A stretch of 62,574 nt of DNA, filler included, from Platydemus manokwari (lineage: Eukaryota), in assembly GCA_037951405.1 (NCBI GenBank). It is 6 parts of 6 records of this genome, joined end to end, with 100 filler letters (N's around TTAATTAATTAA, not from the genome) between each part and the next. Parts side by side here need not be neighbours in the genome. Positions count along the whole stretch, not along the records: positions 1 to 10,400 come from JBBMOY011136772.1; 5 more parts are not named here. One strand, given 5' to 3'. The notes under the pieces were generated by a model. It searched no databases. It saw only the letters and a list, made by a program, of their open reading frames with translations, and was not told where the DNA came from. Below are positions 4,830 to 8,549 of this stretch, in pieces (the first letter of the stretch is position 1; every line of letters starts with the position of its first letter). A program made the position numbers and the translations under genes.

Positions 4830-6710
4830 GGTGGAACATGTCCTCGCATCATTTTTATATTATATACACAGTTTTTCTCTTTGTCCGATAATTTCTTCAA
4901 AAGGCTCATCAAATATGATTCCTCTCATTTTAAAAAATATAGATATGCTCTCTGTTTCAATTAGTTGGTGTAGTTTGAGTTCTAATACTGTTCAGTTATA
5001 TGGGGATTTAACTTTCTCAGATCTCTGCTTAACGTTTTGCATTATTTCTGATGATCATGTCAAGCCGTAGTCTTGTCACTGTTTCAGGTGGACTTGTATC
5101 AATGTCGGTGTCCAGTTCGAGTAATTGGAGGTAATGCTCGAGATCATCTAAGATAGTTGCGTGCCGTTTAGATGTCAGACCAGGGATCTCTGAACAATGA
5201 ATAAATATGTGGGCATAGGTTTCTTATTCCGTGTTGCATCTTCGGCAAAGTATGAATTTATTGATCTTCAAGAAATGTGATGTGAAGTTTAGCAGATTAT
5301 TCCAGAATCCCAGTGATAAGTGGAAGTTTTCCAGAGGCTTCTGTCATAGATGGGATTCTGAAAATCAGTGTACCAGTCTGCCTTGTCAGGTGAATTTCCA
5401 CATGAGATGAATTTCCACAATATGGTGATGAAATTCCATGCCAATTCGGTTTCTCCACATTTTTCTAACCACGAAGCACGTTTTGGTTCTTTGAGATTTT
5501 TTCCTCGGATAATTTGTCGGAAATCCCGAGTAGAGATGTTGATAGATCGTTGGTTTCAGGTAGCCTGCTTTTGACAATGTCGAGAAGATGTTGAATCATA
5601 AACCTTAGGAATTCCTGGTCTGGACTTGTCGGAAACTAGAAGGCACAGACAATGCTCTGAATGCAATAATCAATTAGGAATGTTGTGAGGTCGATTCCAC
5701 CCATTTTGTTAGAAAAATAAAGAAACTTACTGTTGCTTGAATATGAACAATCCATTTTCAGTATTTTGCGGCCTATCTGATTGATTTTCTTGTCAAATGA
5801 TTGGACCGGTTCTTTGTTGTAATTTATATTAATGTCCTTGAGTCTAGCGTTGTTGTTTCTACTTGTAGGATCCAGAAATGAAATGGTAATCTCGAGTGAA
5901 GAAAGATATCAAGGGATTGGAACTTGTGTGAAGAATGCAGTCTGTATTCGGCAATCGCTTCGAAGACCGGTAATGATAGATTGGAGTATATGATCGGCTA
6001 GTGTTCTTTTTGGTAGGCTAAAAGGGACTTCAAGATATTTGTAAACGTTTTCGCTGTCCCCAATTAGCATTGATTCATCACAGATCGACATGTCAATCCT
6101 GTTTCGAATGTTTTTGCAATAATATTCGCATTTGAAGGTGTTCATAACAATTTGGATATCTGTTGCTTGATGAATTAGATGGTTGAGCTAATTTTCGAAA
6201 TTTTCGCCGGAATTTGCAAGGGTAACGATGCTAACTGCATAAGCTAAGGTGAAGAATTGGCTGTTATGGAGGGTGAAACGCTCCGGTACGTTTGCTGATG
6301 ATCTGATTAAAAAGTCAATGAATAGACAAAAGAGTGTCATAAACAAGGGGCCTCCTTGCTTGATAACCCGGTATTTTGGAATAAGTGGAGTTTTCAGTCG
6401 GCCGCAGGAATAGGTCAATTTTGATTCTTGATACAGTGCCTGGATCATCTCGATGTAATTGATATTACATTCCATTTTGTCCAGGGTGTGCCAGATGATC
6501 CAGTGTGATAGATTTGGGAAGGCTTCTCTGAGGTTAATCCAGCAGAGATGGAGATCCTTGTTGAGTTGGGCCACGTATTCTTGCAGAGAAGATAGGTATG
6601 CATTGTGTTCTGCACAACTATCTGAGGCGAACATAGCTTTTTGACTTGGAAAGAGCAAGTTTCCGGAGTATAAATTTTAGAGTCAGAAAGGAGGGTTATT
6701 TTTGATACCA
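4830..6710 (-). mobile_element. Decayed RLE-type (NeSL/Utopia/R2-like) non-LTR retrotransposon, 5'-truncated
   Basis: RT motifs in ORF 6188-6658: QKAM..CAEH, WINLREAF, IKQGGPLF..LF, LAYAVS (degenerate YADD). Downstream are a CCHC knuckle CRRCNTE*ETYAHIFIHC (~5247-5194), an RH motif and endonuclease-like RLDMII...EVKSPY (~5070-4997). Multiple stops and frameshifts. Confidence 0.85.
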
Positions 6711-7056
6711 CAGAGCTAGAAGAGTTAAAGAATTTATATTTATACCTTTAATTTATTAATTAATCCTTTAGAATTAGTTTTTACAAAAAACTAAACAACC
6801 TCCTAACAGATATTTTAAGTGATCAACCAAATAGTAGTAAGAAATTATGCATTAATAATAAAAATATTGATAAAACTGTACTGTATAATATTTTGTATAA
6901 AAGGCAAATTATAAAATTTGATATATTAAGAATTTGACTTTAACTATCAGTTAATGAAACAATAATTTTATTCAAACAACAGCTCTTTAATTATATTATC
7001 TATTATTAAAAATTAAAATTATTGATCATCGCATAGAAACAAGCTATTAATATCAC

Positions 7057-8549
7057 ATGAGAGAAATTGTCTATGTCCAAATTGGTCAGTGCGGCAATCA
7101 AATGGGAACAAAAGTAATATTGTCAGTCATTATAAAATAAAAATTCAAGATTTGTTTATTTTAAGTTTTGGGAGATTATGTCAGACGAACATGGTCTTGA
7201 TCCTAGAGGACTCTATCGAGGTGAATCAGATTTACAATTAGAGAGAATAAATGTATACTACACGGAAGCAACAGGTGCAAGCATTATTATTTAAATAACT
7301 ATAATGATTCTAGGTGGAAAATATGTTCCAAGAGCAATATTAGTCGACTTAGAACCTAGTACAATGGAAACATTGCGAGGTAGCCCATACGGACAGATAT
7401 TTCGACCAGATAATTTTGTATGGGGGCAGAGAGGATCTTCAAATAATTGGGCGAAAGGTCATTATACTGAAGGTGCAGAACTTTTAGAATCTGTAATGGA
7501 TTTATTGAGAAAAGAAGCAGAAGGCTGTGATTGCTTGCAAGGATTTCAAGTAGCCCATTCTATTGGTGGAGGTTGTGGAGGAGGTATGGGTACATTACTG
7601 CTTCAAAGAATTAAAGATGAATATCCAGATAGGATTAATATTACATTTTCCGTTTATCCTTCGCCAAAGGTTTATAGAATAATTTATTATTATGAAAATG
7701 ACCTCAAATTTTAAATTTTTAATGATTAGGTTTCTGATGTCGTAGTTGAACCGTACAATGCTGTTTTGTCTATTCATTTAATGCTGGATTTTTCGGATGA
7801 AACTGTCGTTATAGACAACGAAGCTTTATTTGATATATGCCAAAATACTCTGAAAATAGCTCCAACATATGGTGATTTGAATCACTTAATATCAGCTACA
7901 ATGGGCGGTGTAACTACATGCTTTCGTTTTCCCGGTCAATTAAATGCTGATCTTAGAAAATTAGCCGTTAATATGGTTCCTTTCCCACGTTTACATTTTT
8001 TTATGCCTGGTTTTGTACCACTGACATCAAGAGGTAATCAGCCTTATAAAAATATTAGTGTTCCCACACTCGTTCAGCAAATGTATGACGCTAAAAATAT
8101 GATGGCTGCTTGCGATCCTAGAAATGGAAAATATTTGACTTGTTCTGGGATTTTTAGAGGAAGAATGAGTATGAGAGTGAGTTTTTTCTTTATAAACATG
8201 CTATTGATTATTGAGATTCTTTAAGGAAGTTGAAGAACAACAGTGGAATATCCAAAATAAAAATTCACGTTATTTCGTTGAATGGATACCAAATAATATT
8301 AAGACTGCAGTTTGTGACATTCCACCTAGAGGTATGAAAATGGCTGCAACATTTTTGGGAAATACTACTGCTTTACAATGGGTATTTAAAAGGATAGGGG
8401 AACAATTTTCAGCTATGTATAGAAGACGAGCTTTTTTACATTGGTATACGGGAGAAGGAATGGATGAATCAGAATTTCCTGAGGCCGAGTCGAATATGAA
8501 TGATCTTATAAGTGAATATCAACAATATCAGGATGCAACTGTCGATTAA
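7057..8549 (+). CDS. TUBB: Divergent beta-tubulin, 430 aa; exons 7057-7113, 7166-7274, 7314-7669, 7730-8176, 8226-8549
   Basis: MREIV start, [54 protein letters not shown]. Four GT-AG introns (52, 39, 60, 49 nt) give one continuous frame. Confidence 0.97.

What the first reader, a model, noticed from the sequence alone, without database searches (positions are those of the whole stretch)
7421..7585. Remodelled GTP-binding loops in the same beta-tubulin ([15 protein letters not shown])
Seen: the tubulin signature GGGTGSG reads GGGCGGG (7565-7585; T143C, S145G). The T3 loop GQSGAGNN reads GQRGSSNN, and EPGTMD reads EPSTME. DLRKL and most of the core are conserved. Established: the T3 and T4 loops contact the GTP phosphates, and these positions are highly conserved in beta-tubulins. 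Inference: several changes clustered at the exchangeable site in an otherwise intact gene suggest altered nucleotide binding or hydrolysis, possibly a non-dynamic structural isotype. With the lost tail, this is the best candidate for an undescribed system in the window.
Basis: partly seen in the sequence, partly recalled or inferred. Interest (0 to 1): 0.72.

Follow-up and report, generated by a model that had tools for sequence, protein, structure and literature searches.

The report
Conserved tail-less beta-tubulin, altered GTP loops
This is an intact, strongly conserved and (in a relative) transcribed beta-tubulin gene of a divergent tail-less family, probably from flatworms, in which the near-universal GTP-binding signature GGGTGSG has been fixed as GGGCGGG. 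It is a natural variant worth a biochemical look, not a decaying copy or a new system.

Summary
The window carries a 5-exon, 430-aa beta-tubulin gene (7057-8549, +). It reads EPSTME (T2 loop), GQRGSSNN (T3 loop) and GGGCGGG (T4 loop, 7565-7585), and it ends ...DATVD with no acidic tail.

The changes are neither private to this assembly nor decay. Four relatives carry the same T4 loop or the same stop position: a metagenome contig, a genomic Logan contig, an intronless cDNA-like Logan contig and an unnamed UniParc protein. They are 96-97% identical in protein while synonymous sites are saturated (dN/dS 0.01-0.02). The cDNA-like contig confirms my splicing model residue for residue.

The protein is only 76% identical to canonical beta-tubulins. 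Change is spread over the whole protein, and the loops are no more changed than the rest (8/57 against 50/263 invariant columns, p=0.45).

The gene belongs to a wider tail-less family. That family includes a monogenean flatworm protein and a contig whose T4 loop reads GGGCGSG. Tail-less divergent beta-tubulins are already described in the liver fluke, where they are testis-restricted but keep GGGTGSG.

Altered GTP handling is plausible but untested. The organism was not identified.

The parts
7057..8549 (+). Divergent tail-less beta-tubulin gene: 5 exons, 430 codons plus TAA
   Evidence: Splicing the exons gives an open 1293-nt CDS. It is collinear with P0413, the product of the intronless contig L003, with no gaps and 413/430 identical residues. 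Pfam finds Tubulin and Tubulin_C on the exon pieces.
7057..7113 (+). Exon 1 (aa 1-19, [19 protein letters not shown]). It holds the MREI N-terminus and an intact T1 loop GQCGNQ.
   Evidence: The following intron, 7114-7165, is 52 nt and runs GT..AG.
7166..7274 (+). Exon 2 (aa 20-55, plus the first base of codon 56)
   Evidence: The following intron, 7275-7313, is 39 nt and runs GT..AG. The junction is confirmed by L003.
7314..7669 (+). Exon 3 (aa 56-174), which carries the T2, T3 and T4 loops
   Evidence: Orthologous exon in L001, 97% aa identical. The following intron, 7670-7729, is 60 nt and runs GT..AG.
7352..7369 (+). T2 loop EPSTME (canonical EPGTMD): G71S, D74E
   Evidence: G71S is present in all three relatives that cover this loop. 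Position 74 is E or D.
7424..7447 (+). T3 loop GQRGSSNN (canonical GQ[ST]GAGNN): S95R, A97S, G98S
   Evidence: R95, S97 and S98 are fixed in the relatives. Position 94 varies (Q, N or A) although it is Q in 57 of 58 canonical sequences.
7565..7585 (+). T4 loop (tubulin signature) GGGCGGG (canonical GGGTG[SA]G): T143C, S145G
   Evidence: The peptide is identical in L001, L003 and P0485, with synonymous differences in the Gly codons.
7730..8176 (+). Exon 4 (aa 175-323). It has a one-residue deletion after I217 (7856-7861, KI-AP against canonical KLTTP) and a remodelled M-loop.
   Evidence: Orthologous exon in L002. The following intron, 8177-8225, is 49 nt and runs GT..AG.
8226..8549 (+). Exon 5 (aa 324-430 plus stop). 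The protein ends ...[10 protein letters not shown] and TAA lies at 8547-8549, so there is no acidic C-terminal tail.
   Evidence: Relatives stop at the same position: L002 ends ...EEATVD then TGA, and L003 ends ...DATVE then TGA.

Best explanation
The window encodes a working, lineage-restricted beta-tubulin isotype of a divergent tail-less family, probably a flatworm family.

Shown:
- The gene is intact.
- Its protein is about 76% identical to ordinary beta-tubulins but 96-97% identical among its own relatives, although synonymous sites are saturated.
- One relative is present as a spliced, cDNA-like contig.
- The altered loops (T2 G71S; T3 S95R, A97S, G98S; T4 T143C, S145G) and the missing acidic tail are fixed features.

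Inferred:
- The protein still folds as a beta-tubulin, pairs with an alpha-tubulin and binds a guanine nucleotide. The T1 loop, D67, E69, N99, S138, the T4 glycines, S172, D177, E181, N204, Y222, N226 and the whole T7-H8 segment (including the beta-type K252) are kept.
- Replacing the phosphate-contacting Thr143 hydroxyl by Cys, removing Ser145 and rebuilding T3 should change how the gamma-phosphate is held and sensed. That would change nucleotide exchange or hydrolysis, and with it lattice dynamics.
- Without the tail, the microtubule surface cannot be polyglutamylated or polyglycylated on this subunit, and it lacks the handle used by tail-dependent motors and severing enzymes. The remodelled M-loop, H4 and H5 suggest changed lateral contacts.
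- Together this points to a specialised, probably stable, microtubule array.
- By analogy with the tail-less beta-tubulins 5 and 6 of Fasciola hepatica, which are testis-restricted, a role in spermatogenesis is the leading guess. It is only an analogy.
For: Gene model and its validation.

Family assignment: Pfam Tubulin and Tubulin_C; gap-free alignment to solved beta-tubulins.

Relatives:
- L001: exon 3 and the start of exon 4.
- L002: exons 4-5, with the same intron positions and the same stop position.
- L003/P0413: full length, intronless, begins with a Nextera adapter.
- P0485: UniParc UPI0006084E36.

Selection: pairwise dN/dS is 0.009-0.018 with dS >= 1, and the loop peptides are unchanged over synonymous codon differences.

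Tree shape: a long stem (about 0.4 changes per site) with very short tips.

Nucleotide-contact residues are retained and T7-H8 is invariant.

Wider tail-less family:
- Protopolystoma VEL08920.1 shares 13 of 32 derived states, the one-residue deletion and the truncation.
- L085 has T4 GGGCGSG, T3 GRAGTGNN and T2 DPAIQD.
- These group with the window's clade at 97/98 support.
- The nearest Atlas cluster of P0413 is a 430-aa 'putative Tubulin beta chain' cluster, mostly Platyhelminthes.

Literature:
- Fasciola beta-tub5 and beta-tub6 lack most of the acidic tail and are divergent (PMC3820024).
- They are testis-restricted, together with the divergent alpha-tub4 and alpha-tub5 (bioRxiv 10.1101/2023.12.11.571084).
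Against: - No biochemical or expression evidence exists for this gene itself. The one run that holds the stretch is not on record as RNA, and laying its contigs showed nothing.
- The loops are not changed more than the rest of the protein, so the loop changes may be one part of a general divergence rather than its point.
- T143C also occurs in otherwise canonical-looking beta-tubulin fragments, so a Cys there may be compatible with ordinary function.
- Orthology with Fasciola beta-tub5/6 was not tested, and those proteins keep GGGTGSG.
- The grouping with P0132 and L085 joins long branches and could be inflated by long-branch attraction.
- The organism is not identified. The flatworm assignment rests on one partial protein and a feature-based cluster match. 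The neighbouring reverse-transcriptase remnant's nearest clusters are mostly arthropod (weak).
Confidence: 0.55

Rival explanations
1. It is an ordinary dynamic beta-tubulin isotype. The T2, T3 and T4 substitutions are functionally near-neutral, conservative changes (Thr to Cys, Ser to Gly, Ala or Gly to Ser) carried along in a generally divergent paralogue. Only the tissue of expression and the missing tail matter.
For: Loop columns changed at 14% against 19% elsewhere, which is no enrichment. All direct nucleotide-contact residues other than T143 are retained. GGGCGSG occurs in five 90%-identity clusters (30 member sequences) of otherwise canonical-looking metagenomic beta-tubulin fragments. 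GGGTGAG shows that position 145 tolerates loss of the hydroxyl.
Against: T143, A97 and G98 are invariant in all 58 canonical full-length sequences compared, and their replacements are themselves fixed under dN/dS of about 0.02. In the wider family the T2 and T3 loops keep changing (DPAIQD, GRAGTGNN; position 94 is Q, N or A). This suggests that the constraint on this pocket has shifted. From memory, not checked here: a yeast beta-tubulin T143G mutant lowers GTPase activity and dynamics. A search for it in the held library found nothing.
Confidence: 0.3
2. It is a decaying duplicate or pseudogene, or the substitutions are assembly or sequencing errors private to this genome.
For: The divergence from canonical beta-tubulin is high (24% of residues). 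The tail is lost. A decayed retrotransposon lies next door.
Against: The 430-codon frame is open and has four canonical GT..AG introns. The same loops and the same stop position occur in four independent sequences. dN/dS is 0.01-0.02 at saturated synonymous sites. A relative exists as a spliced contig.
Confidence: 0.02
3. It is a beta-tubulin-like protein that no longer polymerises into microtubules and has taken on another role, for example as a capping, sequestering or regulatory subunit. The E-site has been rebuilt because hydrolysis-driven assembly is no longer used.
For: The tubulin signature fails PROSITE. The M-loop (6 of 15), H5 (7 of 14) and H4 (5 of 13), which include lateral-contact elements, are the most changed regions. 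The tail is absent.
Against: The segments that form the intradimer and longitudinal contacts (T7-H8, 0 of 17 changed) and the H11-H12 motor-binding face (4 of 31 changed) are among the best conserved, as expected for a subunit that sits in a lattice. The very strong constraint over the whole length resembles that of polymerising tubulins. The Fasciola tail-less isotypes are simply tissue-specific tubulins as far as is known.
Confidence: 0.08

Closest known systems
Canonical metazoan beta-tubulins (for example the solved chains 6u42, 1jff and 5syc, and Echinococcus beta-2, P0254)
   Same: Same fold family (Pfam Tubulin and Tubulin_C). Same length up to residue 430. MREI N-terminus. T1, T5, T6 and T7 loops, and beta-type K252. 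Introns at the old positions 19/20, 55/56 and 174/175, which are shared with many invertebrate beta-tubulin genes.
   Different: Only 74-76% identical. The signature is GGGCGGG instead of GGGTG[SA]G. T3 reads RGSS instead of [ST]GAG. G71S. A one-residue deletion at 218. A remodelled M-loop, H4 and H5. No acidic tail.
Fasciola hepatica beta-tubulin isotypes 5 and 6 (Ryan et al. 2008, PMC3820024; spatial transcriptome, bioRxiv 10.1101/2023.12.11.571084)
   Same: They are divergent beta-tubulins that lack most of the acidic C-terminal tail and sit on separate long branches. They are expressed genes, from a flatworm. They are testis-restricted and are accompanied by divergent testis alpha-tubulins.
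   Different: The paper states that all Fasciola isotypes keep GGGTGSG. Position 200 is L or F there and V here.
VEL08920.1, an unnamed protein of Protopolystoma xenopodis (P0132), and the unnamed gene on Logan contig L085
   Same: Both lack the tail (...DARVDI and ...QEAVP). Both share the one-residue deletion, and P0132 shares 13 of 32 of the window's rare derived residues. L085 shares I139 and C143 (GGGCGSG) and RGSPYG. They group with the window's clade at 97/98 support.
   Different: They are only 66-73% identical to the window's protein. L085 keeps S145, has a different T3 (GRAGTGNN) and a far more altered T2 (DPAIQD). The N-terminal half of P0132 is not on its contig.
Metagenomic beta-tubulin fragments with GGGCGSG (P0021, P0022, P0026, P0032 and the P0360 cluster)
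   Same: Cys at position 143 of the signature.
   Different: Their T2 and T3 loops and the rest of the exon are canonical. They are about 72% identical to the window's exon 3. Their organisms and tails are unknown.

Membership tests
Tubulin superfamily, beta-tubulin | Tubulin/FtsZ GTPase domain followed by the tubulin C-terminal domain | tested here: met
   Pfam PF00091 (1.2e-32 on exon 3) and PF03953 (3.7e-18 on exon 4, 1.7e-13 on exon 5). Gap-free match to residues 57-174 of solved beta chains, E about 1e-61.
Tubulin superfamily, beta-tubulin | PROSITE-type tubulin signature [SAG]-G-G-T-G-[SA]-G in the T4 loop | tested here: not met
   The regex fails on the spliced protein (GGGCGGG). It matches 58 of 58 canonical full-length beta-tubulins. 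The motif is a diagnostic pattern, not a requirement of the fold, so I still file the protein as a beta-tubulin on domain and overall similarity.
Tubulin superfamily, beta-tubulin | Beta-specific marks: N-terminal MREI, and Lys (not the alpha-type Glu) in the T7-H8 DLRKL segment | tested here: met
   MREIV at residues 1-5. K252 is kept, and T7-H8 has 0 of 17 residues changed.
Tubulin superfamily, beta-tubulin | Acidic, Glu-rich C-terminal tail after H12 | tested here: not met
   The protein ends ...[10 protein letters not shown] at residue 430, where canonical sequences continue with 12-20 acidic residues. Relatives stop at the same position.
Tubulin superfamily, beta-tubulin | GTP binding at the exchangeable site and assembly with alpha-tubulin | not testable with these tools
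   Only inferred, from the retained contact residues.
Tail-less divergent beta-tubulins of flatworms (Fasciola beta-tub5/6 type) | Loss of most of the acidic tail, together with a long separate branch in beta-tubulin trees | tested here: met
   Described for Fasciola in PMC3820024.
Tail-less divergent beta-tubulins of flatworms (Fasciola beta-tub5/6 type) | Orthology with the Fasciola genes (AM933589, AM933590), and a flatworm source organism | tested here: inconclusive
The flatworm link rests on Protopolystoma P0132 and on the nearest Atlas cluster being mostly Platyhelminthes. The window's organism is coded and was not identified.
Tail-less divergent beta-tubulins of flatworms (Fasciola beta-tub5/6 type) | Testis-restricted expression | not tested
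   No RNA run holds the stretch. The only expression evidence is one cDNA-like contig of a relative, from an unknown tissue.

The most novel reading that the evidence does not exclude
This would be a whole family of animal beta-tubulins that has given up the canonical exchangeable-site chemistry. Cys replaces the signature Thr in both sampled branches of the family, and the T2 and T3 loops are free to vary. The family has also lost the modifiable tail. Such a subunit would build microtubules whose stability no longer depends on GTP-hydrolysis-driven dynamic instability or on the tubulin code, for example the long-lived cortical microtubules of flatworm sperm.
Probability: 0.2. Interest if true: 0.7.

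Novelty: new variant of a known kind. Interest (0 to 1): 0.42.

Why it matters
The Thr of GGGTGSG and the AG of the T3 loop are among the most invariant residues of all tubulins. Here evolution has replaced them and then held the replacements fixed under very strong selection, in a subunit that also lacks the tail on which most of the tubulin code is written.

That gives a ready-made natural test of how these residues set nucleotide exchange, hydrolysis and lattice stability, and of what a tail-free beta subunit does in a real cell type.

If the source is a flatworm, including parasitic relatives, such isotypes also bear on which tubulins benzimidazole-type drugs can reach. Position 200 is Val here.

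It is not a new kind of system. It is an unusual isotype in a family that has already been noticed but never studied biochemically.

Tried and rejected
- The exhaustive representatives search with exon 3 found nothing closer than 75% identity. At 50% clustering this family is hidden under canonical representatives.
- P0485 could not be placed on any contig.
- The run search gave one coded run that is not on record as RNA. Laying its contigs placed only two 31-mers on the conserved C-terminus, so it neither supports nor contradicts the assembly.
- Rfam found nothing real in the window.
- Paper searches for T143G, for tbb-6 tail data, for the run and UniParc accessions, and for GGGCGGG in a tubulin context found nothing usable. 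The C. elegans review gave only that tbb-6 is pharyngeal and of unknown function.
- The Protopolystoma contig does not hold the N-terminal exons, so its T3 and T4 loops remain unknown. Exon 1 of the L085 gene was not found.
- Atlas look-ups of P0132 and of the reverse-transcriptase remnant were uninformative or weak.
- I did not predict a structure. The tool returns no coordinates, so it could not show how the changed side chains sit against the nucleotide.
- The full spliced protein has no reference, so I searched exon pieces and a guide alignment (A3) instead of typing the protein.
- Two representative proteins that the tools returned (P0321, P0300) look mammalian; P0321 looks like an MC1R-TUBB3-type read-through. 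They were printed once. They also sat, like every fetched protein, in my local BLAST set. I did not follow them up.

Full report
**1. What is in the window**

The piece is AT-rich (29% G+C). The reading frames around the finding are exons of one gene on the + strand. Joining five exons gives an open 1293-nt CDS of 430 codons plus TAA.

| Exon | Coordinates |
|---|---|
| 1 | 7057-7113 |
| 2 | 7166-7274 |
| 3 | 7314-7669 |
| 4 | 7730-8176 |
| 5 | 8226-8549 |

The four introns are 52, 39, 60 and 49 nt long, and all run GT..AG. Pfam finds the Tubulin GTPase domain and Tubulin_C on the exon pieces. Residues 57-174 align without gaps to residues 57-174 of solved beta-tubulins, so canonical sequence numbering applies.

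**2. The observation**

It is correct at the stated coordinates.
- GGGCGGG lies at 7565-7585 (T143C, S145G).
- GQRGSSNN lies at 7424-7447 (S95R, A97S, G98S).
- EPSTME lies at 7352-7369 (G71S, D74E).
- DLRKL is intact.
- The protein stops at ...[10 protein letters not shown], where canonical beta-tubulins continue with the acidic tail.

| T4 motif | Proteins |
|---|---|
| GGGTGSG | 316 |
| GGGTGAG | 55 |
| GGGCGSG | 18 |
| GGGCGGG | 3 |

The three GGGCGGG proteins are this gene's own relatives. The protein fails the PROSITE-type pattern [SAG]GGTG[SA]G, which 58 of 58 canonical full-length sequences match.

**3. Not private, not decaying**

Word searches with exon pieces each found one close relative.
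- P0001/L001 is a 590-bp ENA metagenome contig. It covers exon 3 and the start of exon 4.
- P0121/L002 is a 1572-bp Logan contig. It covers exons 4 and 5, with an intron at the same place and a stop at the same codon.

A profile built from a canonical guide plus the window's exon pieces (A3) then found P0413.
- P0413 is 430 aa long and lies on a 1375-nt Logan contig (L003).
- L003 has no introns and begins with a Nextera adapter, so it is most simply a cDNA contig.
- P0413 is collinear with my spliced model, with 413 of 430 residues identical and no gap. This confirms every exon junction.
- Its 90% cluster also holds P0485. This is an unnamed 545-aa UniParc entry (UPI0006084E36) with a mis-modelled N-terminus, 96.6% identical to the window's protein.

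Pairwise Nei-Gojobori estimates among the window, L001, L002 and L003 give pS of 0.56-0.79, so dS is at least 1. They give pN of 0.013-0.023, so dN/dS is 0.009-0.018.

The loop peptides are unchanged while their Gly codons differ synonymously.

In a tree the clade has 100/100 support. Its stem is about 0.4 changes per site and its tips are at most 0.03. That pattern means a burst of change followed by tight conservation. Its position among eukaryotic beta-tubulins is unresolved.

**4. The changes are not clustered at the GTP site**

Against 58 canonical full-length sequences, 324 columns are at least 95% invariant, and the window's protein differs at 58 of them. Nearly all of these differences are shared by P0413 and P0485.

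In the nucleotide-binding loops T1-T7, 8 of 57 such columns are changed, against 50 of 263 elsewhere (Fisher p=0.45).

By region:

| Region | Residues changed |
|---|---|
| H5 | 7 of 14 |
| M-loop | 6 of 15 |
| H4 | 5 of 13 |
| H6-H7 loop | 3 of 8, including a one-residue deletion |
| T7-H8 | 0 of 17 |
| S7 | 1 of 13 |
| H11-H12 loop and H12 | 4 of 31 |

The direct nucleotide contacts Q11, C12, D67, E69, N99, S138, G140-142, G144, G146, S172, D177, E181, N204, Y222 and N226 are kept, and so is the beta-type K252.

So this is a generally divergent paralogue. Its loop changes are notable because those residues are otherwise invariant, not because change is concentrated there.

**5. A wider family**

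P0132 is VEL08920.1 of the monogenean flatworm Protopolystoma xenopodis, a partial model from residue 175 on.
- It also ends without a tail (...DARVDI).
- It has the same one-residue deletion.
- It shares 13 of the 32 rare derived residues of the window's protein in that half.

L085 is a Logan contig (42% G+C, with a Bcl-2-family gene next to the tubulin gene). It carries a further tail-less gene (...QEAVP) that is 75% identical to P0132.
- Its exon 3 reads T4 GGGCGSG, T3 GRAGTGNN and T2 DPAIQD.
- It shares I139, C143 and RGSPYG with the window's protein.

In a 22-row tree the window's clade plus P0132 plus L085 separate from all canonical sequences at 97/98 support. These are long branches, so attraction cannot be excluded. 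The shared deletion and truncation are independent characters, however.

A feature-based look-up puts P0413 nearest to a 430-aa 'putative Tubulin beta chain' cluster of 68 members, mostly Platyhelminthes. I could not read the sequences of that cluster.

Cys143 therefore seems older than the window's tight clade. S145G and the RGSS form of T3 are specific to that clade. Within the clade, position 94 is Q, N or A, although it is Q in 57 of 58 canonical sequences. Together with the different T2 and T3 of L085, this suggests that the constraint on this pocket has shifted across the family.

**6. What is known**

Ryan et al. 2008 (PMC3820024) described six beta-tubulins in adult Fasciola hepatica. 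Isotypes 5 and 6 lack a large part of the acidic tail and sit on separate branches. All six keep GGGTGSG.

A spatial transcriptome (bioRxiv 10.1101/2023.12.11.571084) found beta-tubulins 1, 5 and 6, and alpha-tubulins 1, 4 and 5, almost only in the testis. Its authors proposed a role in spermatogenesis.

Tail-less, divergent beta-tubulins are thus a known kind in flatworms, with no known biochemistry. I could not test whether the window's gene is their orthologue.

I found no paper that mentions GGGCGGG as a tubulin signature.

From memory, and not verified here (one search found nothing): a yeast beta-tubulin T143G mutant lowers microtubule GTPase activity and dynamics.

**7. How it most likely works**

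Shown: it is a real, constrained gene, transcribed in a relative, with fixed loop changes and no tail.

Inferred:
- The protein still pairs with alpha-tubulin and binds a guanine nucleotide, because the contact residues and T7-H8 are kept.
- Loss of the Thr143 and Ser145 hydroxyls and the rebuilt T3 alter phosphate handling, and so exchange, hydrolysis or the lattice response to hydrolysis.
- The missing tail removes the sites of glutamylation and glycylation, and the handle for tail-dependent motors and severing enzymes.
- The changed M-loop, H4 and H5 alter lateral contacts.

The result would be a specialised and probably stable array. The cell type is unknown; spermatogenesis is a guess by analogy.

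The main rival is that the loop changes are near-neutral in an otherwise ordinary tissue-specific isotype. Cys143 also occurs in canonical-looking metagenomic fragments.

**8. Limits**

- The organism is coded and was not identified. A flatworm is likely. My own guess is a planarian-like one: the genome is AT-rich, the introns are tiny, the run's contigs total about 543 Mb, and the only annotated relative sits in UniParc alone. This was not shown.
- The reverse-transcriptase remnant upstream has mostly arthropod neighbours in the Atlas (weak).
- There are no expression data for this gene itself.

**9. Verdict**

This is a new variant (signature GGGCGGG, T3 RGSS) within a known kind: a divergent tail-less beta-tubulin isotype. 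Interest is moderate.

Noticed in passing
window 5032-6747 (- strand): This is a stretch of higher G+C (38-40% against 20-28% around it). It holds consecutive open pieces in different frames. One of them (6188-6658) gives a weak Pfam RVT_1 match (6.8e-06, below the gathering score). It looks like a decayed non-LTR retrotransposon lying 300 bp upstream of the tubulin gene. Its nearest Atlas clusters are reverse transcriptases, mostly from arthropods.
   Followed up: partly
L085:3734-4201 (- strand), with the tubulin gene at L085:546-2621: The distant tail-less relative on Logan contig SRR24765318_99403 has exons 4 and 5 fused (no intron at 323/324). Its T2 loop reads DPAIQD, which changes the otherwise invariant E69. 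A Bcl-2-family gene lies next to it. Its exon 1 was not found within the 545 bases upstream of exon 2.
   Followed up: partly
P0021, P0022, P0026, P0032 and the P0360 cluster (metagenome and Logan fragments): This is a separate set of beta-tubulin exon fragments with GGGCGSG but canonical T2 and T3 loops: five 90%-identity clusters with 30 member sequences. The organisms are unknown. It shows that Cys at signature position 143 has arisen, or persisted, outside the window's family.
   Followed up: partly
P0141 / L086 (NCBI GCA_052370215.1, contig JBNOXF010054869.1): This is another beta-tubulin C-terminal half that ends early (...YQQYQEAEA). It lacks the window family's deletion and most of its derived residues. 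It branches at the base of the canonical sequences, so it may be a second, independent kind of short-tailed beta-tubulin.
   Followed up: no
window 7000-7056 and L003:20-71: The 5' untranslated leader just upstream of the ATG is recognisably conserved between the window and the cDNA-like contig of the relative (catagaaaca... block). The leader is collinear with the genome, so there is no sign of a trans-spliced leader within about 45 nt of the start codon.
   Followed up: no
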